Positions 16,324 to 64,000 of a stretch of 64,000 bases of DNA are shown piece after piece; position 1 is the stretch's first letter; each line of letters opens with the position of its first letter. The stretch lies in NCBI GenBank assembly GCA_976226885.1, contig OZ320320.1, forward strand, positions 83,514,001-83,578,000, written 5' to 3'. Source of the stretch: Iphione sp. A-MEVVRFRX5 (lineage: Eukaryota). The position numbers and the translations under genes are program-made. The notes below the pieces were generated by a model that saw only the letters and a program-made list of their open reading frames with translations, had not been told where the DNA came from and searched no databases.

Positions 16324-19300
16324 ATGGCTCTAGCGGTGGCTTTATGGCTTCTAGCCGTGGTTCATTGGGCTCCTCAGGGCGCTCATGGGGAAGTCACAGG
16401 TGAGGGAATATGATGGCATCCTACAGTTCATTGTTAGTGTACCCATAATGTAAACAGAGATTTATCGAGCCAAATAGGCCTCTTCATTTTATTCTGGTAA
16501 CAACAAATTTAACATATATTACTACATTATGTGTATTACTTAGATCATATTAGATATAGCAGCTTTATTCTATGTTTTCTTCGTGCAGCTGTTAACTGTG
16601 GAGCCGTTCGGAGTGATCCTCATGCAATTCAAGTAAGCCTCAATATCACAGAAGGTGTGGCAATGTTCAAGTGTCTCGATGGCTTTACAAGCAAGGATTT
16701 AACAACAGAATACAACATATCTTGTACCAATGGAACGTGGGAGCTGACAGACATTTTCTGTGAAAGTGAGATATTCCTCAAAACACTGTATCCATGTTTT
16801 AGTCAGAACATTATTGCTTACAAATCTTCCTGTCATTGACCATTAACCAATTTTCACATATTATGAAACATGTTGTTGGTGGCTTTATTATGAGAATATT
16901 CGTTCAGTTTCATACTAAATGAATATATATATACTATTGTTGTATTTAAATTATCATTTATTGTACATGAAAAGCTCCATGCCACATGGAGATGTTAATT
17001 AAAATCATCAACACAGATAATCTCATGCTTCCAGTTGACATTGATGAATGCAAGGAAAACCTGCATGCATGTAACATTAGTGGACATGAAATGTGTCTGA
17101 ATACTTATGGATCCTACACATGCATGTGCCACCCAGGTTTCTTTCGGGAAAGTCAGATGAATAGATGTGAGGGTAAGTTGATCCACATCTCACCAAAGTG
17201 GCCACCCAAAAATACAGGTAACCTTATGGAAATGGTATCTTTGCTAGGTTGCATTCACATAGAAGCTCTCACAAATATTACTCTTGAAGAAAAGCAAACT
17301 TTACAATAGGGTCCAGAAATGCCAGTCAGTCAAACACTCAGTATATTATTTTTCTCAATGTCCGAAGTAATTCTTATGGAACCATTAACCCTTTAACGAC
17401 CAACAATGGTAAAATGCACATGATTATGCATAATTTTTGGTGATGGATGCAAAATTGCAGATCATAATACAATGTTATTAATCTATAGACCAAAACAAAT
17501 GAGGTATCAAAAGATTGCAAATCACTTAAGATGTGCTCAATAGTAAGTTTTTCTCTAAAACCAATATTAATAACTCTTTCTTGCCATATGTTGCCAGTAA
17601 GTGGAAATTTCTCATTAATTTTAGATAAAATGGCCCCTACTCAGGACTATCCTCTTACCATGGCAACTGAAATGTAGGAACAAAATTAATGCTAAATCAA
17701 AGTACAATTCTTATGGTTTACAGTGATGCATGGTATGATGTCAATTTTATCTATATACACCTGTTAGGTGGAGAGCTAATCTTTTATCTCTGGTCCCACA
17801 GGCAAAAACATGATTTTTCCTGGTCGTTAAAGGGTTAAAATGTCACCGAATTTTTCTGATGTTATTTCAAGGGCAATTGCCAGACATAGACCTTGTTCAT
17901 TAAAAGCCTGTAATTCAGTTTGCAGTTACATTGCTCAGAGGACAAAATTACATACAGTTACTTAAAATCACAGGAAATATATTCTATTTTTCTCCCTGCA
18001 GCTATAAACTGTGGATCTGTAAGGAGTGACCCTCATGCAGTTCAAGTAGGCCTGGATGGCAGGGATGATGTTGCCACATTCAAGTGTTTGGATGGTTTCA
18101 CAAGCAAGGATTTAAGAACAGAATACAACATATCTTGTGCCAATGGAACATGGGAACTGCAAGATGTTTTCTGTGAAAGTAAGATACTCCTCAAGACGCC
18201 CTTCACATTATTATATCAGAAATTTATTGCTTACACATCTTCCTGTCTGCAACAACAAATAATTGTTTCTATCACATGAAGCATTTTGTTGGAGGCTTTA
18301 TTGTCTGAATATGCATTTAGTTTTATACAGTTGATTTCATTATTTCTAGTGGACATTGATGAATGCGAGGAAAATTTGCATGTTTGTAATGTTAGTGAAC
18401 AAGAAATATGTCTCAATACTTATGGATCCTATACATGCATATGTCATCATGGCTACATTCGGAACAGTCAGATGAACAAATGTGAAGGTAAGTTGATCCA
18501 GAAGACTGACCAAAGTGGCCACTCAAAAATAAAGTTAACTGCCGAGAGAGGGCATCTTTGCTACATGGTATTCACATAGAAGCTGTTAGAAATATAACTC
18601 TGTATAACACAAAGTGAACACCACACCAGTAGGTTTGATTTCCTCAGCCTTTATTCTGAATCAGCATACAGCACTTGGTGGGTGTGACGAGAGCATCATA
18701 ACACTTTCCTTATGTATACTAACTTGAGTCTGAACACTGCACACAAGGTTGCACATCTCAAAAACAACCATTAATTACAACAACTTGAACAACGGGTAAT
18801 CAATTGGTTTTACACCTGGTGACATAATACAGAGGTTACTCGAAAACTGAACACTCAAAAACCGAATTTTCCCAAATCCGAATGATATTTTGGGGAACCA
18901 AACATGTCTCTATTTAGACACTCATATATATCCGAACACTTGTATTCACAATCCGAATGATTTTAGGACAAATTTGGACCATTTTTGGATGAATTTGGAC
19001 CATTTTTTGATGAATTTGGCTGAATTTTGCAGATTTTCGGACTAATAAGGACCATTTTTGCCAATTTTTGGAAGAATTTGCCAATTTTCAGATGATTTTT
19101 GCTACTGTTTGCTGGTATTAAAAGTGTTGAGGTAGGGCTGGGGCCCCCCTAACTGAGTGAAATTGACAGTGGCCTCAGGCCACTATTCAAAATCTGAATT
19201 ATCCCAAAACCAAACGATTTTGGTGGAAACAGCGATCATTCGGTTTTGGAATATCCTCTGTAGTGCCAACTGTCCAGGGACATTGGTAGATATAGGCAAT

Positions 19301-27049: not shown

Positions 27050-29690
27050 AGTTCATTAGTGACAAACTGCCAGTATTCAGTCCTTAGTTACATTAGTTCA
27101 GTGGCACGCATCATTACAATGCTCTTAATGAGATCTGCAGCTGGCATAAATATTAATCATTTTAGCCATTCTTCAGGCAGGGCTGGCGGACCTTATTGCA
27201 TCAACTGATGTATCACAGAAAGGGCCCTGTGTAAGACCAGATCCTCAATCCTCTCGATCCTGAGACGCTTGTTGATAACTCTTGCAGGCAGGTGTTGTTT
27301 GGACAGCACACAGACGCTGACACATCAGTTCAAATGAAGACCAAATGCATCAACTGATGTGTCACAGAAAGGACCCTGTGTAAGACCAGATCTTCTATCC
27401 TCTCGATCCCGAGATGCGTGTTGATAACTCTTGCAGGCAGGTGTTGTTTGGACAGCACACAGACGCTGACACATCAGTTCAAATGAAGACCAAATGCATC
27501 AACTGATGTGTCACAGAAAGGACCCTGTGTAAGACCAGATCTTCAATCCTCTCGATCCCGAGATGCGTGTTGATAACTCTTGCAGGCAGGTGTTGTTTGG
27601 ACAGCACACAGACGCTGACACATCAGTTCAAATGAAGACCAAATGCATCAACTGATGTGTCACAGAAAGGACCCTGTGTAAGACCAGATCTTCTATCCTC
27701 TCGATCCCAAGACGCATGTTGATAACTCTTGCAGGCAGGTGTTGTTTGGACAGCACACAGACGCTGACACATCAGTTCAAATGAAGACCAAATGCATCAG
27801 CTGATGTTTCACAGAAAGGACCCTGTGTAAGACCAGATCTTCAATCCTCTCGATCCCAAGACACATGTTGATAACTCTTGCAGAAAGGTGTTGTTTTGAC
27901 TGTACAAAGGGCACTAATGGATCTGTCACAGAAAGAGCCCTGTGTAGGACAAGGTCCTCAATCCTCTCGATCCGGAGACACATGTTGAGAGCTCTTGCAG
28001 ACAGGTGTTGTTTGGACTCCACACAGATACGGACACATCGGTTCAGATGAATTTGGAGATTACAAGTCGTTGCACTCGAACATCTGAAAAACAGCCCAGC
28101 TCCGCAATGTAGGTAGGGCAGCACTAAGGCTTTGAAGAGCTCTAGGCGAATCCCCATCGGTAGCAGCTGTTTGGCCCTGCCTATCTTCAGCGACGCCATC
28201 CACATCCTAATTGCAATGGCACTGAGGGCACACTGAGCTGTCTCTTGAAGGTGAAGGACGTCAAGCGCGCTAACAAGTATTAACAAGATCATCATCGTAC
28301 ACTACAGCTGAACAGTCCGGGCAAAGGTGCTCCGTGATGTTGTCTATGATAATACTTAATGCTTTGGGGCCAAACACGAAGCCTTGAAGAACTCCGTGGA
28401 GAATCAGCTGCCTGGCCAAGTCCCACCCCAGGCATCTCGCATACTGAGTGCACCCTGTGAAATAACTCCCCACTAATTTGCACACCTGGGCTTGCACCTG
28501 CCTGATGCAGACAATTCAGCACACCTGAGGAAGGCACCAGATCAAATGCCTTCCTCAAGTCGAATGCCAGTAGCATAGGCCATCATTCACTAACTCAGTG
28601 GTGCGCCAAAGGAGAGTCACAACTGCAGCTTCAGTATGGCGGCTGGGCCTGAAACCATGCTGGTGGTTTCTTAGGAACCTGCGTGTTTCCAGCTGTCGCA
28701 TCAGATCTCCTACAAACCAGACCTCGAAAACTTTCCCCAGGAGAGACAAAATGGATACAGGCCTGTAATTTCAGAGGAGGTTTTTTGTCTCTCGTTCTTA
28801 TGGAGAGACATTACTCAGGCAAGCTTCCATGCATTTGAATAGGTGCCCTGTTACTATTATCCGAGCGACCACCCAGGGGACGAAGTGAAGCGACAGGGGA
28901 AGTTCAAACATCATCGATTCATCCCGATGCTTTCGGTAGGCACCTCTCGAGCGGTTGAATTGTCGTTGGACACTCGTGGCTAAAACTTTGGATGTAGGTG
29001 GATGACGTTGGTAGCTGGAGGAGTATGTGCTGACTTGGCCAGTTTGGCTATCTCATCGATAAAATAGTTGTTGAAACTGTCACCTACATGACCAGTCAAA
29101 GCATCTGCACACAGCATTATTAGTTGACGCTGTCCCCTACCTAGTGCTTCATTCATGATGCCCCCCGTAGCTTTGAAGCATCACTACAGGCTTGTCTCTC
29201 ACCTGAAATAGCCAGTGTTGCTTCTGGTTCTTCTGTGTTGCTTTTTTTGACAACAGAGCTTAAATGTTTGAAGATCAACAGAGCCACCCCTCTTCCAAAC
29301 ACGGAACAAGTACGCCTTATCAGTGGTGAGTTCCAATACACTCTCGTCTAGCTGGAAACTGCCATCTTGTTCTGATCTTGAATGCCACCCTTTCAGGGCA
29401 CGTCCCTTGATATGGGGGATAATATGGTTCCAGACCTCCTCCGGGTCTTCTCGCTGATTGATGACGTCCTCCAGAAGTGCCTGATGGAGCACAAATTACC
29501 AGCCTTCTCTTATACTGGGCCTTGAAGGAGGAGACAATGATCCTATAGCAGCCAGAGGCTGGCCGTGGGAAGTGGTGCTTTGAGGTAGCTACTTGTTGAT
29601 GGTGTGATTTTGGAGAAGGTCTTGGAGGTCCTGTGGCTCCCAGCATTATCACAGAGGAGGAGGAGGAGGTAACGGCTCCCTAGGACTTGG
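27050..29690 (-). mobile_element. Decayed L2/CR1-group LINE (RT region with frameshifts)
   Basis: Minus-strand fragments NHQHGFRPSRHTEAAV, AFDLRKAFDLV, GVLQGFVFGP, YDDD and LELFKALVLPYLHC, similar to the LINE at 36.8-38.0 kb. Confidence 0.85.
27195..27990. repeat. 149-bp tandem array (~5 copies) derived from the LINE ORF2 C-terminal coding region
   Basis: AAGACCAGAT recurs at 27233, 27382, 27531, 27680 and 27829. The unit is collinear with LINE coding sequence (RIERIEDLVLHRAL). Confidence 0.9.
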
Positions 29691-46594: not shown

Positions 46595-49500
46595 TTAAAC
46601 AACTTGGTCCTGCCGTGTTTTCTTGAGAAGTTGTTCTTCAACAGTTTCCTTCTGCTGTTTGAGGGTGTTCAGCCACCGTACTGAGGGAGAACACAGGAGT
46701 CGCACTCTCTGAAATAAGACAGGAAGGGCATAACTAACACAGGCATCACACTCTCTCAAACAGGACTGGAAGGGCATGACTAACACCGGAGTCATACTCT
46801 CTAAAACAGGACTGGAAGGGCATGACTAACACTGGAATCATACTCTCTCAAACAGGACTGGAAGGGCATGACTAACACCAGAGTCATACTGTCTGAAACA
46901 GGACTGGAAGGGCATGACTAACACTGGAGTCACACTGTCTGAAATAGGACTAGATAGAGATGACTAACACGGGAGTCATACTCTCTGAATGAGGACAGAA
47001 AGAGCATGACTAACACGGTAGTCACACTCTCTGAAACAGGACTAGAAGGGCATGACTAATACAGTAGTCACACTCTCTGAAATAAGACAGGAAGGGTATA
47101 TCTAACACAGGAGTTGCACTCTCTCAAACAGGACTGGAAGGGCATAACTAACACTGGAGTCACACTGTCTGAAATAGGACTAGATAGAGATGACTAACAC
47201 GGGAGTCATACTCTCTGAAAGAGGACAGAAAGAGCATGACTAACACGGTAGTCACACTCTCTGAAACAGGACTAGAAGGGCATGACTAATACAGTAGTCA
47301 CACTCTCTGAAAGAGGACTGGAAGGGCATGACTAACACCGGGGCCATACTCTCTGAAACAGGACTGGAAGGGCATGACTAACACCGGAGTCACACTCTCT
47401 GAAACAGGAAGGGAAGGGCATGACTAACACCGGAGTCATACTCTCTGAAACAGGACTGGAAGGGCATGACTAACACTGGAGTCACACTCTCTGAATGAGG
47501 ACAGGAAGAGCATGACTAACATGGATGTCACACTCTTTGAAATATGACTGGAAGGGCATGACTAACACCAGAGTCACACCGTGTGAAACAGGACTAGAAG
47601 GACATGTCTAACTTATGTGGGCTTGGCTGGACAACTTTCTATGGATATAAATATGGAATAGAACTTAATGTTATCAGGTGACTTCACAAGAGTAAAGCCT
47701 CATCTCAGGACTGTGTACACAGTAGTACCTGTAGTAACGACAAGTACTTACAAACCCCTATGAACATGTGATAAACTGCTGTGTATGCTGAATAAACAGC
47801 ATAAGTTAGAACACAAGTCTTCACTCCACCTCACCTACATAAACAGTACAGAGTCCCTTCTGATCTCAGAGATATGGCAACCCTAGACAAGGCCTTCCCT
47901 ACCTTTCTCCAGGGTATGCTCTGGTCCATGGTGAACAGCCTCCAGAGGGCGGTGAGGGGGATGGCAGACATGAGGAGAAACGTGATCACCCAGCCAACCA
48001 CATCGGCCCACACGGGGAAGGTGTACGCACCATATGTGAGGCGCTTGTAGTCAACGAAGTTCAACACTAGCACCACCTAATGGGACAAAACAGAACCATA
48101 TGTGAGGCGCTTGTAGTCAACGAAGTTTTGACATCAGCACCACCTAATGGGACAAAACAGAACCATATGTGAGGCATTTGTAGTCAACGAAGTTTTGACA
48201 TCAGCGCCACCTAATGGGACAAAACAGAATCATATGTGAGGCATTTGTAGTCAACAAAGTTCAACATCAGCTCCACCTAATGGGAAAAAACAGAACCATA
48301 TGTGAGGCATTTGTAGTCAATGAAGTTTTGACATCAGCACCACCTAATGGGACAAAACAGAACCATATGTGAGGCATTTGTAGTCAACGAAGTTTTGACA
48401 TCAGCGCCACCTAATGGGACAAAACAGAACCATATGTGAGGCATTTGTAGTCAACAAAGTTCAACATCAGCTCCACCTAATGGGAAAAAACAGAACCATA
48501 TGTGAGGCATTTGTAGTCAACGAAGTTCAACATCAGCACCACCTAACGGAACAAAACAGAAGATATTGTACGCTGTTCACAACAACCTGTTGAAAACGGC
48601 ATAGTTCTCTATCTGTGGAAATCACAGGAGAATTCTTAGAGCATACATATGCGCTTTTAAACTGTAAGTCAAAAAAGATTATCTGTGTTTGTAGTAACAT
48701 GCTGAAAAAATATTGGTTGATAACTAGGTTGGTCGTTTTTTTACCGCACAAATATTTCAGTAAAAAGAAACTAGATAGTACTTCCAATCCTGGTTCAATC
48801 CCTTCTATTGCTTGGGTATTAATGACAATATCATGTGAAAACTAGTGACATGGCAAACAAAATGGTGTATTATTTGGATCTGTAGTGTTATTCATTTAAA
48901 GATATGGGCAAAACAATTATTCTTATAAAGTCAGAACAGGCCAACCAGAAACACAGATATCTTTTAGATAGCCCAATCTACATATGTATATGTAAACAGC
49001 AATATGGTGAAGGTTGTATTGAAAGAGGACTTAGACTTCTATCTATCTATTAAAGCAATGTTACACTGACTTTCTTACAGGACTGCTGCATCATGTGCAC
49101 GGCATGGTATCCATGGACAACAGCGGCCATGGATACAGAGCCTGAAGTCAATTTAGTAATTGATCAATAAAGAGGAGCTGTGCTAATCCAAATTAATATG
49201 GTCAGGTCAACATAACTGGTGTTTTTTTAAATGTATTTCTTTAACTTCGTTTACACCCATTACATCAGTTAACACCACCAAGGAACCTCAAAGCTAAGTG
49301 GACGCTAAATTGTGATTTCCAAATTCAGAGTGAAATGTTAAAGACTTGATGACACTTTATTTCTCAGAAGGTGATTCTCACATTGAGGTAACTACATGGG
49401 AATATGCCTTATACAGCTTACATCAGTATTAGATATCATACAGTGAAAAGTCACATTGGAGACCAAGCCTGGGACCCTGCCCCGGGTTGGTCTCCCCTAC

Positions 49501-52500
49501 AGGTTGATATCTAGTGTAGAAATGGAGTTTGGTACTGTACAATTTTGATCTCTCCTCTGAGTTGGTGTCACCTGTGGGTTGGTCTTTAGGTAAGTTTCCA
49601 CTCTATGAAGAACTGACTCAAAGCAGTTTTTAGAAATGAGTTCAGCCTATACAATACATGATTGGAAGAGAAGGACATACCACAATCGCCAGGGAAGCCG
49701 TCACCGTGCAGGTCACCAACCACAGCCCACCTGTGCAGACACCGATGATGCCTCCCAGATCCTTTATGAACCATTGCAAACCTAGCAGATAAAGTACAGA
49801 GAAGGACGTACCGCAATCGCCAGGGGAGCCGTCACCGTGCAGGTCACCAACCACAGCCCACCTGTGCAGACACTGATGATGCCTCCCAGATCCTTTATGA
49901 ACCATTGCAAACCTAGCAGATAAAGTACAGAGAAGGACGTACCGCAATCGCCAGGGGAGCTGTCACCGTGCAGGTCACCAACCACAGCCCACCTGTGCAG
50001 ACACCGATGATGCCTCCCAGATCCTTTATGAACCGTCGCAAACCTAGCAGATAAAGTACATTATCAGCTGTGGCTGGAACTGATAAGGGCCCCAACAGAA
50101 AAAAAAGTTTAACGTACTGAAAAATAAAAGGGTTGGTAGATCAATGGTGTCTTACTTGTTTCTATATGCAAATGCCACAGGAAAAAGCTAGTGAGAATTT
50201 GTCAAGCCTGGTACTGTAATTCCTCATTTTTTAATCGTACTCAAGCTAATATTATACAAATGCTAATGACCAAAGGAATACAATGTGATTTTGTATAAGT
50301 CTCTATCGTTATTCATTCCAAAGATATGAACAAAACAAGAAAAAATTATTATTCCATTGGGAGATTTTTAAAAGGGGGGCAGTCAGGTTACCAGAAACGT
50401 GGATATTGTTTCACAAGCCTACAAGTGATGTCATATATATATATATATATCATCTAGGAACTTGTAGATTCAATAATTAAACAATGTTTTCACTACTTGT
50501 CCGTGCTTTACTCATTGCTTTGTTTATTCATTGGTGCACAACTTGACATGGTACAGCAGACATACAGAGGGCTATGCATTTGACCTGTTGCACAGAGGAA
50601 GCTTTGGCGGGGTCCCTGAGAGGCTAGATCTTTGGTAGTATTTTTCTTGCTTTTTTTCATTTTGATTAGTGTGCTCATTTGGTTACTCTGTCTTGATTGT
50701 AATCATTCCAGGGACGTATCTAACCAATAAATACATAATAATATGTTATTAGTCAGTCATCTGCTAATTATACTGTCACGCGACACCTATTAACATAGGT
50801 CCCCGTACCACTTGATACATTGGCCTAATAAAAGGCTAGGACGGTCTGACACAATCAAGACTAGCAAAATCAGTATACAGAGGATATTCAAAATCTGAAC
50901 GATCGCTGTTTCCACTGAAATCATTCGGATTTCGGAAAATTCCGATTTTGAATAGTAGTGTGAGGCCACTGCCACTTTCAATCAGTTAAGTGGGGCCCTA
51001 GGCCCTACCTCGACACTTTCCATACCTACAAAAATGAAATAAATCATGTAATTAATGTGAACTATTCATCTGAAAATCAGCAAAACGAAGCCAAATTTGT
51101 CCGAAATTTGGGAAATTCAGCCAAAAATCATTTGGATTTTGGACAGAAATGTTCAGTTATATTGGTATTTTAAGAGAGAAAAATGATTCGTAACAGCCAA
51201 TTCTGTTTAGATTTGGGATAATTTTGTTTTTGAGTGTTCAGTTTTGGAGTATCCTCTGCATATGTCAATTATACCAGTGGGATTATCAAAGGCCACAAGG
51301 AGGGGGGCGGGGGGGCAGATGTTTGAAAGTTTAAGGACCCTTTTACATGTGCCCATTTTACTTCACAGTGAATGCTGCTTGACTTGATTTCTATCTGAAC
51401 TATTTACATGTATCTGATCACAATGCATATGGGCACATTTAAATTTCACCAATCTGTCCAGGACTGATTGTATTGCAAACAGATATGTAACCAATAGATT
51501 TCTATAGCACATTCCTCCACCTACACATCTGGTGACCCATTATGCCATGCAGACTTGTCAGAAAGTGATTTTGTGGGGAAATGTGTGCCATTTTGGACAA
51601 TGTGTGCATATATATAAGTGGCCTAAGCAGTCAGAGAAAACAAGACTGGCCATAATCTGCACTCCAGCATTCTCCTTGCTAAGGCAGGGTTTACGTGTGC
51701 CATTCTCCTTGCTAAGGCAGGGTTTACATGTGCCATTCCCTTTGCTAAGGCAGGGTTTACATGTGCCATTCTCCTTGCTAAGGCAGGGTTTACATGTGCC
51801 ATTCCCCTTGCTAAGGCAGGGTTTACATGTGCCATTCTCCTTGCTAAGGCAGGGTTTACATGTGTCTGTTGTTCATGCAAACAGATGTGTTTCTGTGATT
51901 GTATAACAACTCATACCATGTGTTCATGCAAACACATGCGTTTCTGATTGTATAAGAACTCATATCACATGTTCATGCAAACACATGCATTTCTGTGATT
52001 ATATAACAACTCATATGACATGTTCATGCAAACACATGCATTTCTGTGATTGCACAAAATAATCATACCATATCATATCTACTAGCTTTGCACATGTGCC
52101 TATTTAGTAATGCAATGTGATGTGTTTGCATTCCTGCTCTCCATCCAGGATGGGTTAGCCAGCAAACGGGCGTGTTTCTCGATAGGTATGCATTGTGGGA
52201 ATCATATCTTGACCATGTGATATTAAATCATCATACACATCTACCGGGGGTTTATACACAATGCGCCGTTGTTTGTTAAAATCAAAATAGATACACGAGA
52301 AAGACCCCCTAGCTTTGAAACAGGCCAGCCCTCATGAAATGGGGTTTGAGATTGGAAAAATAAATGCAAGAGGCAGTGTGACATCAGCTGCATGGATGTA
52401 ACGATGTAAGAGGCAATCAAGTATGGCCGCCATCTTGATTTCTCCTCGTATCTGTATGTGAACCGTAGTGACCACACCCTATAAAGGAGCCTATAGTTTA

Positions 52501-55500
52501 GAGGGAAAACACAGCCAAATGGGTCCCTCTTCGTAGCACGTCACTATGAAATGACATGATGTATATTTCTTCTTGACACGATCTGCAGCAATAACTATTT
52601 ACCTAATTAACCCATTTACAAGTCTTGAGAAAGTTATCATTTAGTGAAACCCCTCCCGGTTTTTAACTGTGAAGTAGGGGACCTCTCAAACTATGGACAA
52701 GTTAACCTTCTGGAATATGTGAGGTGATCCAAAGGAAACCAAGAGCTCTCGAGTCCCTGGCTTATCAATGGATATCATCTGGAGTCCCCTGGCTTATCTA
52801 TAGATATCATCTGGTGTCCCCTTGCTTATCTATAGATATCATCTGGTGTCCCCTGGCTTATCTATAGATATCATCTGAGTCCCCTGGCTTATCAATGGAG
52901 ATCATCTGGAGTCCCCTGGCTTATCTATAGATATCATCTGGAGTCCCCTGGCTTATCTATAGATATCATCTGGTGTCCCCTGGCTTATCTATAGATATCA
53001 TCTGGAGTCCCCTGGCTTATTGATAGATATCATCTGGAGTCCCCTGGCTTATCTATAGATATGATCTGGAGTCCCCTGGCTTATCTATAGATATCATCTG
53101 GTGTCCCCTTGCTTATTGATAGATATCATCTGGAGTCCCCTGGCTTATTGATAGATATCATCTGGTGTCCCCTGGCTTATCTATAGATATCATCTGGTGT
53201 CCCCTGGCTTATCTATAGATATCATCTGGAGTCCCCTGGCTTATCTATAGATATCATCTGGATTCCCCTGGCTTATCTATAGATATCATCTGGAGTCCCC
53301 TGGCTTATCTAGAAATATCATCTGGAGTCCCCTGGCTTATCTATAGATATCATCTGGAGTCCCCTGTCTTATCTATAGATATCATCTGGAGTCCCCTGGC
53401 TTAGCCGTCTAAAGAATATCACTCTAGTTCCTGTGATACTAGCTAAAACAGCCATCTTCATCTGCCGCTCTCTTACTGGGTTATCCTCGGCCTAGTTACT
53501 ATTCTGTGACACGTGATGTGATAAAATATCCTGCCAACAGCGATGTTGTCGCACAGCTCGTCGTCTGGCGAGTTGACGTATTGCTAGAGGGACCCATAGG
53601 CAGGGATTTGTGTGTGTGTGCGGGGGGGGGGGTTGAGTATCTGAAAGTATAAAAGTTGAACTCCTGGCGAGCTTTCTGCAGCAGAGAATTATAAAGGTAG
53701 GTCTCTGGGTGGGATTTGTAGGTCCCCTGATACCCCTTAGCTACACACAGGTGGGGGGGGGGGTGTCAGGGTCCACCCAATAACACTTCACCAACAATTC
53801 AAAGCAGTCGCTTAAAAATACGCTAATAACGTTTCACCAAGAATTGATTTGGCAATAACTGTTCACCAAAAATTGCCTTATAAAGTTTCGCGCCTGTTTG
53901 GAAGGCCAAAATAGCGTTTTGCACTGAATCAAAGTCCTCAATAACATATCACCAGAATAGTTGAACCCCCCCCCCCCCTGTAGCTACGGGCCTGGCTAGT
54001 GTGTACTTCTGAGCTGGAATTGGTGGCTTACCGTAAACCCAGGCCACAGCGATCGTCTTGCAGAGTCCGGTAAAGACAAGCACGTACGGGGCACTGGTGT
54101 CCAGCATCTGCAGGATGTACATGCCCGCCTTGAACGAAAAACATTTCACAATCATACTCCAAAGATGGTCGACTTCCTGATCTAGACTGGTGATATTATC
54201 AATAAAAAAAAGGACCAGGAAATTTCAAACTACCGTTCTTTTTCCCAACTGTAAGTTAACATCCCCGGAATACTCATATTGATAACAGGCTCAATTAGCT
54301 GTAGGACCAAAGGTTTGTTCCCCGTGTTGAATTTCCAAAGGATATATATAAAGTGATATTTTATTGCAAATGTCGGTTGGCATTGTCTCTGAGATGCTAT
54401 TTTATAACTGATTGATGGTAAGGCATTGTTCATGTGCTGCCCAATCTGGACGGGACTTATATATTGTCTACTACTTGACTCTTTGTGCTGATTGGCGAAG
54501 GACACAACTGAATGAAATTAACTACTGAACGTTTGAAAACATCTCAGAATCAACAGTCCCAGTATGCAAAATTAAAAAGATTCAAGCCGTTGCCCCAGGT
54601 TAGACCCACAGATTGATTAGAAGCTGCTGCCTTTCACCTACCTGTGACGTCAAAATCACGCCGGCGAGAGTCCACGTGACAATGAGACCAACCAATAGGA
54701 ATAGAGGACGCCTACCACGTGAAAAAAGGCCGGGAAAACGCTCCACGAGGATGGTCTGCACGTTGGCGGCGATAGGCATCTATAAGATGGAGACTAATGG
54801 AGTTTCAGCCGGTGAGATGCACAAATCCAACGTGAGCAGGAAAGCGTGCAGAATGCCCGCCGCCTGAATATGAGAGGGGCATATACACACAGGGTGCCAC
54901 ATATTCTGATGAAGCATTACTACTATTACTGGGTATTTTAATTTATAGTGAAGCATTATTTGCCTCTTCAAATAGGGGTGAAGTGCTACCAATGAATCAA
55001 TTCTTGGTGAAGCGCTATCAGCGATTGTTAAAGTGTTATGGTGGTTTTGAATTCTTGGTGAAGCGTTATTGGGTACCCCCTGATCCCCCTCCCCCCCCCT
55101 GTGCATATGGTCTTTCGATAACCCCAATCCACCCTTGACGGAGTGTTGCAGCTCACTGAAGCATCTCCAAGATCAACATCAAGGGAGTTCGAGTTGGTAA
55201 GATACACAAATCCAAGGAAAAAGGAGAGCTTGCGTAGAATGCTACCCAAGGAGGATATGGAAGAACTGCTGAAATGATAGCGGACTATCTTGTTCCTGGT
55301 TAAAGATACAGTGAAAATGAAATGATAAGATTAAGTCTGTTGATCCTGGAGCTAGGCATCAGCCATCTGCTGTAAGTATCAGGCCCATAGCCAGGAACTG
55401 TTGTGGGGGGTATCTGAAATTAGAGAGGTTGAACTCCTGGTTAGGAAGATGAAACTCCTGATTACATTACATCTGTCTCTCTTTCACTCTCTCTCTCTCT

Positions 55501-58500
55501 CTTGCTCTCTCTCTCTCTCTCTCACTCTCTCTCTCTTTGTCCCTCTGTCTCTCTATTCCTCTCTCTCCTTTGCCCTTCTCTCTTTGTTCCTCTCTCTCTT
55601 TGTCCCTCTGTCTCTCTATTCCTCTCTCTCTTTGCCCCCTCCCTCTCTCCCATATGGACTTGGAGAGGTGTAACCCCTGGTTTTGTGGAGGGGTATTGGA
55701 CGATATCCCCCCGATACCCCCTTGGCTACGGGCCTGAGTATCACTCTGCTGAGGGTTCTCCATACTCACACAGCTGCCGAGGCCGAGGTTGAACACCATG
55801 AACATGAACAGGGCGGACCACAGGGGCGCCACAGGCATCCGTGCCAGCATCTCAGGATAGGCGACGAAGGCTAGACCGGGCCCTGAAGAGGAACACACAG
55901 TGAGCCCATCAGTCCCAGCATCATTCTACGAGGAGTGTTAGTCAGGGTAAAATAACTATCAGTCTTTTAAATACCAAGTATATGATAAAAGAAAACAATC
56001 ACTTCCATAGGAGGATAGGGTCAAAGTGCCGTTTGTATTTTGTATTTTGTGGAAAACTGAAATGAGAATATGGGTTGCTAATTCTGTATAGAATACAACC
56101 GATGTTAAGAAAGATAAGCATACCTTGACCAATGACCTCTGGGATGGCCACCTGCAATGCGTCTTGTCTGATGTTTTCTTACTTCAGATAAGAAAGATAA
56201 GCATACCCTGACCAAAGTCCTTTTTGGATGCCTACCTGTAATGTCTGTTTTCTGATGTTTTCTTACTTTAGATAAGAAAGTTAAGCATACCTTGACTGAT
56301 GACCTCCGGGATGGCCACCCGTAATACGTGTTGTCTGATGTTTTCTTACTTAAGATAAGAAAGATAAGCATACCTTGACCAATGACCTCCGGGATGGCCA
56401 CCTGCAATGCGTGTGCTAGGTGACCCAAGATAGCAAACACAACAATGCCGCAAAGCATGCTGGTCAAGAAGTCTGAGATGGTAACAATGATGCCATCACT
56501 AGAAAAAACAGTATAATCACTATATCATGTCAGTGTATGAAGTGAAAATGTTCAGCAACACATGAGGCCTAAACAAAAATATCTATGTTTCCAGAAACCC
56601 GACCCACCCTGATATTGGTATGCCAATGGAATACTTAAATTGTTTTTCTTGTTTTGTCAATATCGTTGGCATGGATACTGATAGAGGCTTGTGCAATAGA
56701 TCAATTTATTCCTTAGACCATTATGTTTCTAATGATGCATGTTTCATTACATTCCTTGTGATAGAAGTGACAGTATCAGGCTTGAAAATAACTGAATAAC
56801 AATTTCATAAGAACATTTGAGTGGTCAAAAAAATATAAGATCAACTGACCGACCTTGTGTTTTTCTACATAATAATGGAAACAAGCATATTTTTGTTTTA
56901 GCCTAATGTGATAGTAGGATTAAATCAGTACTATGCTATGGTACCAAACTATGCCACAATACATGAAATAGCAATGTATGAGGTACTAGTTTCCAATAAA
57001 GCTTTATTCTTCAACTGGGATGGTTGGGTAATTTATAGCACTTATATTACACATTGTGGTACACAGGGCAAGTGTGAGATGTGTGTGGGGATTATTTGAG
57101 ATATGTGCCAGGAGTAAGAGGAGGGCACTGTGTGAGGTGTGTGCCAGGAATGTGTGGAGGGCACTGTGTGAGGTATGTGTCAGGAGTGTGAGGAGGGGAT
57201 TGTGTGAGGTATGTGCCAGGAATGTGTGGAGGGCATTGTGTGAGGTATGTGCCAGGAATGTGTGGAGGGCATTGTGTGAGGTATGTGCCAGGAATGTGTG
57301 GAGGGCATTGTGTGAGGTGTGTGCCAGGAATGTGTGGAGGGCACTGTGTGAGGTGTGTGCCAGGAATGTGTGGAGGGCACTGTGTGAGGTGTGTGCCAGG
57401 AGTGTGAGGAGGGGATTGTGTGAGGTATGTGCTAGGAATGTGTGGAGGGCATTGTGTGAGGTGTGTGCCAGGAATGTGTGGAGGGCACTGTGTGAGGTGT
57501 GTGCCAGGAATGTGTGGAGGGCACTGTGTGAGGTATGTGCCAGGAGTGTGAGGAGGGGATTGTGTGAGGTATGTGCTAGGAATGTGTGGAGGGCATTGTG
57601 TGAGGTATGTGCTAGGAATGTGTGGAGGGCATTGTGTGAGGTATGTGCCAGGAATGTGTGGAGGGCATTGTGTGAGGTATGTGTCAGGAGTGTGAGGAGA
57701 GCATTGTGTAAGATATGTGTCAGACATATAAGGAAGGGATTGTGTGAGGTGTGTGTCAGGAGTGTGAGGAGGGCACTGTGTGAGGTGTGTGCCAGGAGTG
57801 TGAGGAGGGCATTGTGTGAGGTATGTGTCAGACATATAAGGAAGGGATTGTGTGAGGTGTGTGCCCAGAGTGTGAGGAGAGCATTGCGTAAGGTATGTGT
57901 CAGACATATAAGGAAGGGATTGTGTGAGGTGTGTGCCCAGAGTGTGAGGAGGGGATTGTGTGAGGTGTGTGCCAGGAGTGTGAGGAGGGCATTGTGTGAG
58001 GTATGTGTCAGACGTGTAAGGAAGGGATTGTGTGAGGTATATATCAGGTGTGTAAGGAAGGCATTGTGTGAGGTGTGTGCCAGGAGTGTGAGGAGGGCAT
58101 TGTGTGAGGTATGTGTCAGACATATAAGGAAGGGATTGTGTGAGGTGTGTGCCCAGAGTGTGAGGAGAGCATTGTGTAAGGTATGTGTCAGACATATAAG
58201 GAAGGGATTGTGTGAGGTGTGTGCCCGGAGTGTGAGCAGGGGATTGTGTGAGGTGTGTGCCAGGAGTGAGAGGAGGGCATTGTGTGAGGTATGTGTCAGA
58301 CATGTAAGGAAGGGATTGTGTGAGATGTATGTCAGGAGTGTGAGGAGGGGATTGTGTGAGGTGTGTACCAGGAATGTGAGGAGGGGATTGTGTGAGGTGT
58401 GTGCCAGGAGTGCGAGGAGGGGATTGTGTGAGGTGTGTACCAGGAATGTAAGGAAGGCATTGTGTGAGGTGTGTACCAGGAATGTGAGGAGGGGATTGTG

Positions 58501-61500
58501 TGAGGTGTGTACTAGGAGTGTGAGGATGTGATGTGAGGGGAATGTCTGGGGTGAGTTTGGGGACGAGAGGTCGAGTGTATGACTTAGGTGCATAAAACCA
58601 GAAATATGGTCAGCCCATCGTTTCATCCGGTTACTAATTGAATGTGGAGAGGGATGTCAGCATAAATTTATTCTTGAAAATTTTAAAAACTACACATCGC
58701 AAAAGAGTACTTAGATTGTTAGGATTCAAAGTACAGTCTGCTTTTAAGTCAAAGCAATTAGTCAATTTCTATCAGTCACGATCAGGTAGACATCAGGAAG
58801 AGGCATCTTCATTTGAGTGGACATTAGGCCTAGTGAAAATGATTGTGTTTCCAGTGACCGGACTGATCCTACATAAGAGCCAGTTATAACATTTTTTCTT
58901 GTCTTGTGAATATCTTCAAAATGAATAAGGATAAACACATGTGTTATATACCAAAGTATTCCATAGGACACTAGTTTTCATCTGATATAAGTTTAGGTTA
59001 AGGTCTCAGCGGTAAAAGTGACATGAACATAATACATTGGTACCTACTAGTATATATTAACACTGCAAAAAGAAAAGAAATGTCACCTACCAACCGACAT
59101 TCTATTTGTTCAGCCTGTTACCAGAAACACAGAACATTCTTTACGCTTATTTAGATGTACACACAGAGTAAAAAATATATACATTTACAACGAACAATTT
59201 TACCCGTTTGCCACCACGGAGTACTACAGAAACCGGTCCCGCCCTCTGGTATTCTGTAAAATGCCTGATATCCTAGTTCTGGCTTATTTCTCAACTACTG
59301 GAGACCTACTTCAGGCGTGTATAGTCTTTATTTCCAGGCACCCGTCTGTCTGTCTGTCTCCAGGCAGAGCGTCAGTGTGTCAGTCTATCTCCTTTTTCTT
59401 TATTAGGAATTATCTCTATTTTCTTAGATGTTTATCACACTGCAGACAGTGACACAACGTTCTCCCTCTCTCTCTGTCTTTCTCTCTCTCTCCCTCTCTG
59501 CCTTCTATCTCTCTGTATCTTTCTTTCTCTCTCCCTCTCTTTCTCCCCCCCCCTCTCTCTCTCTGTCTTTCTTTCTCTCTCCCTCTCTCTCTGTCTGTCT
59601 CTCTCTGATCCCTCTGTCTCTCTCTATCTGGCTGTCTCTCTGTCTGTCTTTGATTCCTGTTTCTCTGTGTCTCTCCCCCTGTCCCTCCCTCTCTCTCATC
59701 TCTCTCGCTCTCTCAATATACACATCTATACATGTATAATTAGATGTATAGATATATATATATCCCAGAGGCTAAATTAGACAGACAAGTATTCCCCGGG
59801 GGTAATAATTGTCATCATTCTTTGGCGCGCTAAACCTATACTTACCATCATTAACGATTTGGAATTTTTGGCAGCCGATTGCCCTTATATGGGAACATAA
59901 TGAAAGGTGAGAGGGTGTATTCGGAAACCAAGCAGACACAGACTTTTAGTCATAAAAGGTGAAAGGGTAAATTTAGAAACCAAATCATGAAAGGAGAGAG
60001 GTTGCATTCAGAAACCAAACCATGAAGGACTCAGGGTGCATTCGGAAACCAAGCCAACACATACTTAAGTCGTAAACTGCTTGTGAAGTGCAAGCAACCT
60101 AATCTAGGGTGAGGTAATGAAAGAATAGCAACTCAAGCTTTCTTTAGGGCCACAAAGTAGGCCGGGCGCTGTGTCAGTCGAGTCATAGGTCAAAGGTGAA
60201 AATGTGTAACGAACTTGTCAGTGTAATAATTTTTTGTCAGAGGACATCAAGATATCATCAGGACTTCGTTCAGATGTATGCCACATCACATTTAATTTAA
60301 CCCTGCAGAACTGTCATATGTTGATATCTCGATGGTGTAAGATAATGTATTTCGATGAGCCTGAATTACCCGCAGTAGTAAGGAGTTGTTTATCATGGTT
60401 TTTGCATGAGGTACGTTGTGTGCGGGTAGTTAGCACCAGCATGTATACCAAGTTACCTTGGAGCTAGGGCTGGTCTCCACACCTGCTCTGGTATCTGTGC
60501 ATTTTCTATTTTCTGTGCGTGTCAGTCAGTTTTTATTGATCATGTTGATTTCAATGAAGGGTGCCATACATGTCCGTGTGGCTTGAGATCCGTTTGAGGT
60601 ATGTTGGCCATTAAGGGGCACTGGCCAAAAATTAAACGCACACACAGAAATCAACAGATAGCAGTATACAGGTGAAACTATGCACATTTATGAATATTTT
60701 TGAATATTTTTTATGCACATTTATGAATATTTTTGAATATTCTTTATATTTATGAATATTTTTGCACTTTTCCCCTCATTTCTGCACGTATGTGCACATG
60801 GTCGCACATTTCTTCACAATTTTCATACTTTTTTCCAGTGACTTTCACCAGTTTTTACACTTTTCTGCAGTGATATTCCTACTTTTTTCAGTGAAATTCG
60901 CCAGTTTCTATTTTTCCCAGCGACATTCATGTTTTTCATTCCGCCTCATGCAACATGAATACACGGTCAATAGCTACCCCTATCCGCGAGCCTGCATGAT
61001 GGCGGAACACGCGTATGATGCATGTTAACACCCACAGGTGGCAAGCGCAAGGGGGCACACACCTCAACGCACGCGGGTGTGTAAACCGCAGCCATTACGT
61101 GACTTATTTTGGAGTGTCGTGTTTGAGCTGGGAATGCGATGCATGTGGTCATAATATATATAAATTCGTGGTGCCTGTGTGTGTATGTATGTGTGTGTCT
61201 GATAAGGTACAATTAGGATATTAGGATATCGTAGTGAAAGTTTAGGACATCAGGGGATCGGACTGAAAAATGAATGTGTTTTTTTCCCACAGATACGGAT
61301 AAAGACGTCAAGCAAGTGGCAGAGAATTGGTTGAACAATTGCAGAGTGACAAATACGAGACGGAACAAGACAACAATTAATATTACAGAATAGGCAAGAC
61401 ACACGAACAATATAACAGGAGTACAAATAGACAAAAGTAGCAATTTCAAAATAGGCAAGGAATGTGTTAATGTGGTAGACAACGAACAGGGAATGTTCAG

Positions 61501-63762
61501 AAGCAGTGAACAAATGTCCAGTTAGAAGTAGAGTAGGAGACCAAGCTTGCAACTGAACAATTTTGGTCTCTACCCTGAGTTGGTCTCCCCTGTGAGTTCA
61601 TTAGCAGTGTAGAAATAGAGTTTTGGACTTGGAACGGTTTTTGTCTCTCCCCTGCATTGGTCTCCCGTGTGGGTTGGTCTTTGAGTTTTGACTGTATAGG
61701 CAGACACCCAGCAAGACTCACATGAAGCAGTTGTTGTTGACCTTGTTATGGCTCCCGATGGTGATGAGGACACCTCCACCACAGTTCAGGGAGAAGAACG
61801 CCTGGACCGCCGCATCAGCCCAGACCTGGAATAACCAGAGATACACACACTCAGCAAACATGCTTTATTCGTCTGCTTCGTAAGGCCTAAAACTCTATCT
61901 GTATTTCTGGTGACATGCTGAAAAAATGTAGGGTCAGCAGATCGGGGATATTTTAATATTTTTATTTCAGTGTTAACTAATATTGAAACAAAATAAGGCC
62001 AAAAAAATAGGTGTGTCTCAGTAAAGACCACCAAAAAAACTAGGTAGGGAGCAGGGTATCTTTATTTTTTTTTAAATTTTCTTTCCACTTTCTTCCTCTG
62101 GTTTTCAATAATAATAAAGATAATATGAAGAATTTAGGCTAATTTGCAGTTTTTTGCTGAATTTCCATGGATTTTACTGTTTTTCTACTGAATTTTCCAA
62201 AAACATGTGCTTTGAAAACACATATCTAAGAAAATTTAGCCTTGGAAACTCTTTGAGACCAAAAATTTTTTAGGTAGGGTGAGGTTTTACTAGGTAGGGG
62301 TGGGTTACCAGAAACACACCTATTTTTTTGGCCGAATGTATATAGCAATTTCACTTCGATCACCTAGATAACTGGTCTCACACAAAAGCTAGTGATATAA
62401 GAGACAATGTGGTGTATTGGATGAGTCTGAAGCTCTATTCATTCCAGAGATAGGGGCAAAATAATTATAAGATTTAAAAAAACTCCGACATACCCAACTG
62501 TAGGGTCCGTCAGGTTACCAGAAACAAAGATATTTTTTACAACGCCTAAGCCTGCATGGACTTGGGAAGGAAATACGGTAACTTTTTTTATACGACTTGT
62601 TTCAAAATATAAAGCTGCATGTAGAATTCTCTAGTTCCTACCTTACCGCGACTTGAATTCACATTTAACAGGGGTGGAAAATAAAAGATATACTGACATG
62701 TGTTTTAGATCAGTGGTTATGTCAGCTGTAAATTGGTAGATCAATAAAAAGGTCTCAACACAAGAATATCTAGTTCACTCCAAAGTGCACTGAATCTGTG
62801 TGCATGGATATGCTCTCTCATGAAGTGCAGGGAGAGAGTGTTTGTTAATTCTTTTAAGCATCCTTTCTCATACATGTTTATGGTCAGAGCCCTAATTGGC
62901 TTGGATACAAATAATTCTTGTACAGAAATAAGCATCATACTACACGATCAACTCAGTTGCAATACCCTCCAGAAACCCCGTCTGATTACCAAATCTCATA
63001 TTGTGAAGTATCTGTGCTGGAAAGGCATGGGTACTGCGTCAACCACAATACCAGTGGAAGTACATATGGCAGCCCTTCATCGCCAGCCTAAGATCCCACA
63101 CCTACATGTGGCCTCATTGATCCCAACCTTTACCCTTCGGTCATTCTATTCGGTTTTCCCAATCCGTATATCCTTCCTGTGCTCTTTGCTGTCCTCCATT
63201 TCTACTGAACTGTCCCTCATCTTTTCTATCCTATTGTCTGTCTCTATCCCCAGCCTATCGGTGTACCATGTAATCCTTAGAGTTTCTAACTGCTGCCAAA
63301 CATCTAGACTACATTGACATCCTACACAAAAGCCGATTGTTACACCATACCTACCCCATGAGAAACTGAAACATGATGGGATTCCATGCAGTAGACTGAC
63401 TTACGGCAGGTGTTCCAGGGGTTGTCACAGGAAACCCAGGGCACCTTAGCAACCATTGGTCCACCACTGGTCTTTGGTTGGACTCTCGTTCCCTCTGTGC
63501 TCTAACCCTGATCCCTCCTTCTCCACGAGTCATCATCTCGCGGGACCTTCCCTATCGGCTCCTCCCAGATCCCCTCCACCCCCCGCCTCTCTACACTCCC
63601 ATGTACTTCCCCATCGTTGGTACTTACCTTGGCTGACTGCAGGCGGACCCAGTCTGGCTTGAGGAAGAAGACGAGCCCGTCGGCCGATCCGGGTGACAGC
63701 AGGGTCTGTATCAGCAGGGACACCAGGATGACGTACGGCAGCAAGGTCGTGACGTAACTAAT
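46595..63762 (-). CDS. SLC6 (sodium:neurotransmitter symporter family) transporter, 3' half TM5-TM12 (366 aa), probably an amino-acid transporter; 5' exons outside the window
   Basis: GT-AG exons in phase: 63628-63762 ([11 protein letters not shown]...KPDW), 61722-61825 ([13 protein letters not shown]...NNNCF), 56374-56498 ([13 protein letters not shown]), 55770-55882 ([11 protein letters not shown]...LGLGSC), 54642-54779, 54032-54128 (GMYILQMLD...WVYG), one of 49943-50043/49812-49912/49681-49781, 47903-48076 ([12 protein letters not shown]), 46595-46708 (stop); total 1101 nt. Confidence 0.93.
46690..47610. repeat. 46-bp minisatellite (~20 copies) spanning the acceptor of the last SLC6 exon
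   Basis: Minus-strand unit ...CCCTTCCAGTCCTGTTTCAG|AGAGTGTGACTCCGGTGTT, i.e. intron end plus exon start. Confidence 0.95.
48030..48560. repeat. 66/67-bp tandem array spanning the acceptor of the SLC6 TM12 exon (8 acceptors)
   Basis: Acceptor AGs (CT on + strand) at 48077, 48144, 48211, 48277, 48344, 48411, 48477 and 48543. Confidence 0.95.
49681..50043 (-). repeat. 131-bp x3 tandem triplication of the entire 101-nt SLC6 TM11 exon with its splice sites
   Basis: Each copy reads ctgctAG|GTTTG...ATTG(C/T)G|GTA(C/T)GT. The spacers 49782-49811 and 49913-49942 are 30 nt. Confidence 0.95.
51665..52050. repeat. 33-bp array (~6 copies) followed by a ~47-bp array (~4 copies)
   Basis: Units CCATTCTCCTTGCTAAGGCAGGGTTTACATGTG and TGTTCATGCAAACACATGC... 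Confidence 0.9.
52755..53405. repeat. 32-bp minisatellite, ~20 copies, with a palindromic core
   Basis: Unit GTCCCCTGGCTTATCTATAGATATCATCTGGA; the core TATCTATAGATA is a perfect palindrome. Confidence 0.95.
56105..56410. repeat. 83/84-bp tandem array spanning the donor of the SLC6 TM7 exon (3 extra donors)
   Basis: Donor GTs (AC on + strand) at 56372, 56289, 56205 and 56122. Confidence 0.92.
57075..58530. repeat. 36-bp intronic minisatellite, ~40 copies
   Basis: Unit TGTGTGAGGTATGTGCCAGGAATGTGTGGAGGGCAT with sub-variants. Confidence 0.95.
59460..59715. repeat. CT-rich low-complexity tract; a similar tract lies at 55470-55650
   Basis: Direct reading. Confidence 0.9.
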
Positions 63763-64000
63763 CTGTGACGTCACGGTTAGGACAACGCCAGCCACACGTG
63801 GGGAAACGAATAGAAGAAAGGCAAGCATACAGGCACAGACAGTATGTCATGGCATCGTTCTAGTCAGCGCATCTCGGTTTAGTTAGAGGAGGCAAATTCT
63901 CCTTGTCTGGTTGACTAGGGCACGGTAGGTTCGGCAAAGGCAGGAGGGTGGTGCCTCAAATAGGTATCCCAGCCTTTCCCAAATCTAACGTGGTAAAACA

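What the first reader, a model, noticed from the sequence alone, without database searches (positions are those of the whole stretch)
49681..50043. Whole-exon triplication with 30-nt spacers: sterically forced mutually exclusive exons?
Seen: three intact 101-nt copies of the TM11 exon, each with AG/GT, encoding [15 protein letters not shown]...[22 protein letters not shown]...TAPLAIA and [15 protein letters not shown]...TASLAIV. The exon is phase 1 to phase 0, so including two copies, or mixing acceptor and donor from different copies (+131 nt), breaks the frame. Known: introns of ~30 nt are generally too short to splice, and steric hindrance is an established way to enforce mutually exclusive splicing. 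Inference: a newly born three-way cassette, including an RR versus QW change in the cytoplasmic loop before TM11.
Basis: partly seen in the sequence, partly recalled or inferred. Interest (0 to 1): 0.75.

Follow-up and report, generated by a model that had tools for sequence, protein, structure and literature searches.

The report
Young triplicated SLC6 transporter exon
One 101-base exon of an invertebrate SLC6 transporter gene really is present three times in a row, but only the first copy keeps the residues this protein family never changes. It therefore looks like a recent by-product of this genome's habit of repeating exon edges, not a working three-way exon switch.

Summary
On the minus strand, 49668-50060 is a 3.0 x 131-nt tandem array. 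It holds three 101-nt exon copies, each with AG and GT, separated by 30-nt spacers. Only inclusion of exactly one copy keeps the frame.

The exon encodes the loop before TM11 plus TM11 of an SLC6/SNF transporter. It has the same 101 nt and the same phases, in single copy, in three homologous loci.

The "new three-way cassette" reading is only partly supported:
- Six of the seven differences between units are CpG transitions.
- All five amino-acid changes lie in copies 2 and 3.
- Three of them hit conserved positions: R/K to W (0 of 130 relatives have W), invariant G to S in copy 2, and invariant P to S in copy 3.
- Copy 1 fits a family profile 8-9 bits better and alone keeps a CTGAT branch-point candidate.

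The same gene has two other tandem arrays across splice junctions, and two related contigs show the same habit. Scan notes, unchecked, report such arrays in many other windows of this genome.

No RNA or DNA runs were listed, so exon usage is untested.

Most likely this is a young junction-spanning minisatellite in which copy 1 is the working exon.

The parts
49668..50060 (-). Tandem array, 3.0 units of 131 nt (17 nt intron end + 101-nt exon + 13 nt intron start)
   Evidence: TRF period 131, 96% matches, score 739. Units differ pairwise at 4-6 sites.
49943..50043 (-). Exon copy 1 (LRRF..IIG..TAPLAIA). It keeps all family-conserved residues and 7 of 8 CpGs, and is the presumed working exon.
   Evidence: (81.5 bits).
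49812..49912 (-). Exon copy 2 (LQWF..IIS..TAPLAIA). R to W, and the invariant G is replaced by S.
   Evidence: (73.3 bits).
49681..49781 (-). Exon copy 3 (LQWF..IIG..TASLAIV). R to W, the invariant P is replaced by S, and donor position +4 is C to T.
   Evidence: (72.1 bits).
49913..49942 (-). 30-nt spacer between copies 1 and 2 (donor GTACGT...ctgctAG acceptor)
49782..49811 (-). 30-nt spacer between copies 2 and 3
50063..50067 (-). CTGAT, candidate branch point 21 nt upstream of copy 1. It lies just outside the repeat, so copies 2 and 3 lack it (inference from sequence).
   Evidence: Several other candidate acceptors of this gene also have CTGAC/CTGAT motifs upstream; several of those exon limits are approximate.
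54032..54128 (-). Upstream exon (TM10 region, ...AVAWVY + G), ends in phase 1 with donor G|GTAAGC
   Evidence: (SNF 404-442).
47903..48076 (-). Downstream exon (end of TM11, loop, TM12). Starts in phase 0. The donor at about 47903 is inferred.
   Evidence: (SNF 475-522, 30.2 bits).
48029..48561 (-). Companion array, 8 x 67 nt = 19 nt intron end + AG + first 48 nt of the downstream exon. It creates seven decoy acceptors, and the consensus unit ends in an in-frame TAG (some decoy units also carry indels).
56106..56414 (-). Companion array, 3.7 x 83 nt = last 39 nt of an upstream exon + GT donor + 44 nt of intron

Best explanation
This is a young tandem triplication of the minisatellite type. The 131-nt unit happens to span a whole short exon with 17 and 13 nt of its flanking introns, in an SLC6 transporter gene. 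Tandem arrays that straddle exon-intron junctions recur in this gene and in two related contigs, and unchecked scan notes report them across this genome. Copy 1, the 5'-most in the transcript, is the working exon. It keeps the native branch-point region and every family-conserved residue. Copies 2 and 3 are unconstrained pseudo-exons that are decaying by methyl-CpG deamination. Because the spacers are only 30 nt and the exon is 101 nt long, neighbouring copies cannot be spliced to each other, and any joint inclusion shifts the frame. The layout therefore looks like a mutually exclusive cassette, but that is a by-product of its geometry and not an evolved switch. Shown here: the repeat, the phases, the pattern of substitutions, conservation in relatives, single copy in relatives, and the companion arrays. 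Inferred: which copy is actually spliced, and the role of the branch point.
For: The array and the intact splice dinucleotides are confirmed. The exon is ancient and single-copy elsewhere: it is 101 nt, phase 1 to 0, in the Haliotis homologue L003 and in two homologous invertebrate contigs, L001 and L002. A profile built from 121 full-length SLC6 proteins scores the spliced peptide at 81.5 bits with copy 1, 73.3 with copy 2 and 72.1 with copy 3. Column counts over 130 SLC6 domains give G 130/130 (copy 2 has S), P 130/130 (copy 3 has S), and R 106 / K 16 / W 0 (copies 2 and 3 have W). The other two changes fall in variable columns. Six of the seven variable sites lie in CpG, which makes up 12% of the unit (binomial P = 2e-5). 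Copy 1 keeps 7 of 8 CpGs, copy 2 keeps 5 and copy 3 keeps 4. Regional CpG o/e is 0.40, against 0.72 in the exons. Polarised by CpG direction and family consensus, copy 1 has 0 amino-acid changes and 1 silent change, while the copy 2/3 lineages have 5 amino-acid changes and 0 silent ones. The CTGAT branch-point candidate at -21 lies just outside the repeat. In the same gene, 8 x 67 nt covers the next acceptor and 3.7 x 83 nt covers an upstream donor. In L002 the donor end of the same exon is repeated about 26 times, and L001 has four junction-spanning arrays. The Haliotis locus has none.
Against: There is no RNA evidence either way. The counts are small: seven substitutions in all. If the polarisation of the shared sites is accepted, the chance that all five amino-acid changes fall on the copy 2/3 side under equal rates is about 0.03-0.13 (my own estimate from the branch-length fractions). 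The gene is itself a divergent SLC6 member, with I for the near-invariant M and C for a near-invariant W in this exon, so family invariance may bind it less tightly. The comparison set leans towards GlyT-like proteins. Copies 2 and 3 still have open frames, AG/GT and a possible GGTGAC branch point 50 nt upstream inside the preceding copy, so they may be spliced to some extent.
Confidence: 0.6

Rival explanations
1. This is a genuine new mutually exclusive cassette. Two or three copies are each spliced, one at a time, into mRNAs and give transporter variants that differ in the cytoplasmic loop before TM11 and in TM11. Exclusivity is enforced by the 30-nt spacers and by the frame.
For: The copies have equal length and phase, intact AG/GT and open frames. 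Only single-copy products are in frame. The spacers are below the roughly 50-nt steric limit (PMC5740500). Tandem exon duplication is the accepted origin of such clusters (PMC9013439 and PMC9741552). Other scan follow-ups describe old exon pairs in this genome (unchecked).
Against: Copies 2 and 3 have lost an invariant G, an invariant P and a conserved R/K and score 8-9 bits lower. The changes are CpG decay, with no silent excess. Three homologous loci have a single copy. Copies 2 and 3 lack the CTGAT branch-point candidate upstream of copy 1. Copies 1 and 3 are not sterically exclusive, being 161 nt apart. Sister arrays in the same gene make only dead decoys.
Confidence: 0.22
2. The whole gene is decaying or is poorly spliced. 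With decoy donors and acceptors at three junction sets, most transcripts are unproductive, no copy is under selection, and copy 1 is intact merely by chance.
For: There are seven decoy acceptors, and the consensus 67-nt unit ends in an in-frame TAG. There are also extra donors at 56106-56414. Using acceptor 1 with donor 2 or 3 gives premature stops.
Against: All eight exons found in the window are open, sit in the conserved order and have plausible splice sites, and four pass Pfam's cut-off on their own. Exon CpG o/e is 0.72 against 0.40 for the region, which suggests constraint. Copy 1 shows no amino-acid change.
Confidence: 0.12
3. This is an assembly artefact or a mis-stated copy number, and the real genome has one or two copies.
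For: No independent reads or assemblies could be examined.
Against: The array is only 394 bp, well within a single long read. The three units differ from each other at 4-6 fixed positions in a tree-like pattern. Comparable arrays occur throughout the gene and in independent long-read contigs of relatives.
Confidence: 0.05

Closest known systems
Tandem exon duplication giving mutually exclusive exons (Kondrashov & Koonin 2001 and Letunic et al. 2002, as cited in PMC5740500 and PMC9013439; human survey in PMC9741552)
   Same: Head-to-tail copies of one exon with the same length, phase and splice dinucleotides. Joint inclusion breaks the frame. The short spacing between a donor and the next acceptor gives steric exclusion.
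   Different: Known working clusters are mostly ancient (PMC9741552 abstract). In the ones I know, the copies have diverged while keeping structural residues and are separated by ordinary introns (my own knowledge). Here the copies are 95-97% identical, the spacers are 30 nt, two copies have lost invariant residues, relatives have one copy, and use is unproven.
Steric-hindrance exclusivity, as in alpha-tropomyosin exons 2/3 (Smith & Nadal-Ginard 1989, from my own knowledge; criterion of <50 bp donor-to-branch-point in PMC5740500)
   Same: The donor of one copy lies too close to the acceptor and branch region of the next for the spacer to be removed as an intron.
   Different: In tropomyosin the short distance is a conserved, functional design between two diverged exons. 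Here it follows simply from where the duplication breakpoints fell, and it does not cover the copy 1 + copy 3 pair.
Minisatellite arrays spanning splice junctions in the same gene, in related contigs and, per scan notes, across this genome
   Same: Unit size is similar (53-147 nt). The units have a short intron part (12-44 nt) and a longer exon part, high identity, and sit in the same gene family and even on the same exon (L002).
   Different: The other arrays carry only one splice site per unit and create decoy donors or acceptors. This unit is long enough, and the exon short enough, to hold both sites and so a complete exon.

Membership tests
SLC6 / SNF sodium:neurotransmitter symporter gene (PF00209) | Significant match to the Pfam SNF profile | tested here: met
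   Four exon ORFs score above the 27-bit cut-off on their own (30.2, 31.3, 42.9 and 45.1 bits). Their profile positions run in order from 181 to 522. PDB hits are to creatine, glycine, GABA and serotonin transporters.
SLC6 / SNF sodium:neurotransmitter symporter gene (PF00209) | Conserved motif YG-x-[RK]-F..D..M-x-G in the loop, and the TM11 proline | tested here: met
   Copy 1 has YG-LRRF-KD..IIG and TAP. Copy 2 lacks the G, copy 3 lacks the P, and both lack the R/K.
SLC6 / SNF sodium:neurotransmitter symporter gene (PF00209) | Shared exon structure with relatives | tested here: met
   The same 101-nt exon, phase 1 to 0, is found in Haliotis L003, L001 and L002. L001 and L002 also show the same order of the other exon boundaries.
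Mutually exclusive exon cluster | Adjacent homologous exons of equal length and phase with intact splice sites and open frame | tested here: met
Mutually exclusive exon cluster | A mechanism that prevents joint inclusion | tested here: met
   Frame: every joint product has a premature stop. Steric: the 30-nt spacers cover neighbouring copies only, and copies 1 and 3 are 161 nt apart (criterion from PMC5740500).
Mutually exclusive exon cluster | mRNAs contain exactly one copy, and at least two copies are used | not testable with these tools
   No sequencing run was listed for this DNA. No transcript-derived protein was found.
Mutually exclusive exon cluster | Each copy is kept by selection (conserved residues retained, cluster shared with relatives) | tested here: not met
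   The invariant G and P and the conserved R/K are lost in copies 2 and 3. The substitutions are CpG decay. Three homologous loci have a single copy.
Junction-spanning tandem (minisatellite) arrays of this lineage | Head-to-tail units of tens to about 150 nt that include a splice site plus a short intron tail, recurring within one gene | tested here: met
   Three such arrays lie in this gene and six or more in L001 and L002. Scan notes report many more in this genome (unchecked).

The most novel reading that the evidence does not exclude
A lineage-specific mutational process preferentially duplicates exon ends together with their splice sites. It is seen at three junction sets in this gene and in two related contigs, is absent from the Haliotis homologue, and is noted across this genome by the scan. 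Occasionally it captures a whole short exon and so produces, in one step, a cassette that is mutually exclusive by both spacing and frame. On this reading the locus is such a birth event, caught before selection has either adopted or erased the extra copies.
Probability: 0.3. Interest if true: 0.65.

Novelty: new member of a known kind. Interest (0 to 1): 0.3.

Why it matters
Tandem exon duplication is the textbook source of mutually exclusive exons, but nearly all known cases are old, so the starting state is rarely seen. This locus shows what a fresh duplicate looks like: near-identical copies with spacers too short to splice. One copy keeps the native branch-point region and the conserved residues, while the others drift by CpG decay. 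Even if the extra copies are never used, the case shows that cassette-like geometry alone is weak evidence of function. It also ties exon duplication to a genome-wide tendency to repeat splice junctions, which may deserve study in its own right.

Tried and rejected
1. Reads. The look-up of sequencing runs was run on 47800-50200 (kind any) and on the downstream exon (kind rna). Neither listed a run, so read laying could not be used, and RNA usage and genomic copy number stay untested.

2. Word search with the 81-aa downstream-exon ORF found no candidate.

3. An exact-pattern scan of JGI metagenome contigs with the 29-nt exon core gave 0 hits.

4. The 33-aa exon alone is too short for database searches. 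Pfam returned nothing. PDB returned only chance hits to a GPCR, at E 0.3-0.9.

5. The representative search with the longest exon found no close relative (best 47% identity). It did supply full-length homologues, which I used to build my own profile.

6. Alignment A1 (P0024 plus exon pieces) was built for a profile word search but not submitted. The pieces aligned poorly, and the profile would have been dominated by insect GlyT proteins.

7. I considered reading the whole 363-nt array, or acceptor 1 joined to donor 2, as one exon. Both give premature stops.

8. I considered whether the overlap of arrays with junctions is just chance, using my own arithmetic on the TRF and exon coordinates. By raw coverage it looks like chance: arrays cover about 27% of the gene span and hold 4 of 16 junctions. 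With the arrays collapsed to one unit each, about 0.65 junction-spanning arrays are expected against 3 seen (Poisson P about 0.03). This suggests enrichment within this window but does not prove it; L001 and L002 add support.

Full report
**What is there.** The minus strand of 49668-50060 carries a perfect-register tandem array of 3.0 units of 131 nt. TRF reports 96% matches, no indels and a score of 739. A 29-nt core occurs three times, against none in 100 shuffles.

Each unit holds 17 nt of intron end (tgtactttatctgctAG), a 101-nt exon and 13 nt of intron start. The exon copies are 50043-49943, 49912-49812 and 49781-49681, and the spacers are 30 nt. The donors read GTACGT in copies 1 and 2 and GTATGT in copy 3.

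The upstream exon ends at 54032 with the first base of a Gly codon. The downstream exon starts at 48076 in phase 0. I enumerated every acceptor/donor combination. Only the three single-copy inclusions stay open. Mixed sites, double or triple inclusion, and skipping all copies each meet a stop soon after.

**The gene.** The exon ORFs on the minus strand match Pfam SNF (PF00209) in order, from profile position 181 to 522. The gap at positions 443-474 is filled by exactly one copy of the repeated exon. PDB matches are to SLC6 transporters.

Using a profile built from 121 full-length relatives, I found eight open exons in conserved order between about 63834 and 47903. Relatives are distant. The best representative is 47% identical over one exon. 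The named ones are from a centipede, an ostracod and several molluscs. Scan follow-ups call this genome annelid-like (unchecked).

The exon encodes the motif YG-x-R-F..D..x-x-G followed by W...P. From general knowledge of SLC6 topology, that is the cytoplasmic loop between TM10 and TM11, plus TM11.

**Relatives have one copy.** The homologous exon is 101 nt long, phase 1 to 0, and single-copy in three loci:
- the Haliotis homologue (L003);
- an unnamed eukaryotic contig from an ENA assembly (L001);
- a second such contig (L002).

The exon is therefore old, and the triplication is private to this lineage or species.

**Do all three copies look functional?** No. The units differ at seven sites, all of them transitions. 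Six lie in CpG dinucleotides, which make up 12% of the unit (P = 2e-5). Six of the eight inferred ancestral CpGs have decayed in at least one copy. Regional CpG o/e is 0.40, typical of methylated DNA, against 0.72 in the exons.

I polarised the changes by CpG direction and by family consensus:

| Lineage | Amino-acid changes | Silent changes | Other |
|---|---|---|---|
| Copy 1 | none | 1 | – |
| Stem shared by copies 2 and 3 | R to Q, R to W | 0 | – |
| Copy 2 | G to S | 0 | – |
| Copy 3 | P to S, A to V | 0 | donor +4, C to T |

Across 130 SLC6 domains the affected columns read as follows:

| Position | Residues in 130 relatives | This locus |
|---|---|---|
| Loop G (x-x-G) | G 130/130 | copy 2 has S |
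| TM11 P | P 130/130 | copy 3 has S |
| R of x-R-F | R 106, K 16, W 0 | copies 2 and 3 have W |
| First R of LRRF | variable column | copies 2 and 3 have Q |
| Final A of LAIA | variable column | copy 3 has V |

The spliced peptide scores 81.5 bits with copy 1, 73.3 with copy 2 and 72.1 with copy 3. Three of five amino-acid changes hitting the few conserved columns is what unconstrained drift would give, and not what selection on working exons would allow.

The numbers are small. The gene is also unusual elsewhere in this exon, with I for a near-invariant M and C for a near-invariant W. This makes the case strong but not proven.

**Splicing signals.** Copy 1 alone sits behind the native intron. 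A CTGAT lies at 50067-50063, 21 nt upstream of copy 1 and three bases outside the repeat. It resembles the CTGAC/CTGAT motifs upstream of several other candidate acceptors in this gene, though several of those exon limits are approximate.

Copies 2 and 3 have only the 30-nt spacer. Their best branch-point-like sequences are a TTTAT 9 nt from the AG and a GGTGAC 50 nt upstream, inside the preceding copy. U2 binding at the GGTGAC would clash with U1 on that copy's donor, 20 nt away.

My inference is that U1 on donors 1 and 2 tends to mask acceptors 2 and 3. Acceptor 1 and donor 1 would then form the default exon. Donor 2 or 3 could still pair with acceptor 1, giving frameshifted, probably NMD-targeted products.

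The steric argument holds for neighbouring copies. PMC5740500 uses less than 50 bp between donor and branch point as its criterion. It does not hold for copies 1 and 3, which are 161 nt apart.

**Context.** The triplication is not alone:
- The next exon's acceptor and first 48 nt are repeated 8 times (67-nt period, 48029-48561). The consensus unit ends in an in-frame TAG, and some decoy units also carry indels.
- An upstream exon's last 39 nt and donor are repeated 3.7 times (83-nt period, 56106-56414).
- In L002, the last 39 nt and donor of the very same exon are repeated about 26 times (60-nt period).
- L001 and L002 together hold at least five more arrays that carry a splice site with a short intron tail.
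- The 18-kb Haliotis locus has no tandem array at all.

Within this window the enrichment is only suggestive: about 0.65 junction-spanning arrays are expected after collapsing each array to one unit, against 3 seen (P about 0.03, my own arithmetic). First-stage notes list the same pattern in many other windows of this genome (unchecked).

The simplest reading is that one mutational process is at work. This instance differs from the others only because the exon is short enough to fit whole inside one unit.

**What could not be done.** No sequencing run, RNA or DNA, was listed for this DNA. Neither exon usage nor the assembled copy number could be checked against reads. No protein or contig from the same species turned up.

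An assembly artefact is unlikely for three reasons. The array is only 394 bp. Its units carry fixed differences in a tree-like pattern. Similar arrays occur in independent contigs.

**Verdict.** The functional part, a working three-way cassette, is not supported by the evolutionary evidence and remains untested in RNA.

- Best explanation (about 0.6): a young junction-spanning minisatellite in which copy 1 is the exon and copies 2 and 3 are drifting pseudo-exons.
- Genuine alternate use: about 0.2.
- A generally failing gene: about 0.1.
- Assembly artefact: about 0.05.

It is a new example of a known kind, tandem exon duplication, of modest interest in itself. It is more interesting as a snapshot of how such cassettes begin, and as part of the genome-wide junction-array phenomenon.

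Noticed in passing
window 48029-48561 (-): Eight 67-nt units, each holding 19 nt of intron end, an AG and the first 48 nt of the exon that starts at 48076. That makes seven decoy acceptors. The consensus unit ends in an in-frame TAG, and some decoys also carry indels. Most decoys also show CpG decay (AAGCGC in the real copy, AAATGC in six of the seven decoys).
   Followed up: partly
window 56106-56414 (-): 3.7 units of 83 nt, each holding the last 39 nt of an SLC6 exon, its GT donor and 44 nt of intron. These form a ladder of decoy donors.
   Followed up: partly
L002 14098-15663 and 9418-11124; L001 5638-7597, 9656-12349, 14455-15391, 17171-17452: Two unnamed eukaryotic contigs from ENA assemblies carry homologous SLC6 genes with the same exon structure and large tandem arrays. 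Their units hold an exon end plus a splice site plus 12-33 nt of intron. One array, about 26 units of 60 nt, sits on the donor of the very exon that is triplicated here. Gene callers read two of these arrays through as the 'proteins' P0002 and P0011.
   Followed up: partly
L003 (Haliotis homologue locus, 18 kb): It has the same 101-nt exon, but TRF finds no tandem array at score 80 or above anywhere in the locus. The junction arrays are therefore lineage-specific and not a property of the gene family.
   Followed up: partly
window 47800-64000: By my arithmetic on the TRF table, tandem arrays cover about 27% of the gene span, including 57097-58526 (40 x 36 nt) and 52747-53403 (21 x 32 nt). CpG o/e is 0.40 for the region against 0.72 in the exons.
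   Followed up: partly
window 27197-27900: 4.7 units of 149 nt at 96% identity. The unit contains cttgcag|GCAGGTG and may be another junction-bearing array.
   Followed up: no
window 16513-18576 (+): Two similar pairs of ORFs with Sushi-like (..CLDGFTSKDL..NISC.NGTWEL..) and EGF-like (DIDEC.ENLH.CN..) sequences, suggesting duplicated exon pairs of a plus-strand gene.
   Followed up: no
window 2-511 (+): An open frame running off the window start (..KYDQRTPGLFKIEWEG..). I did not identify it.
   Followed up: no
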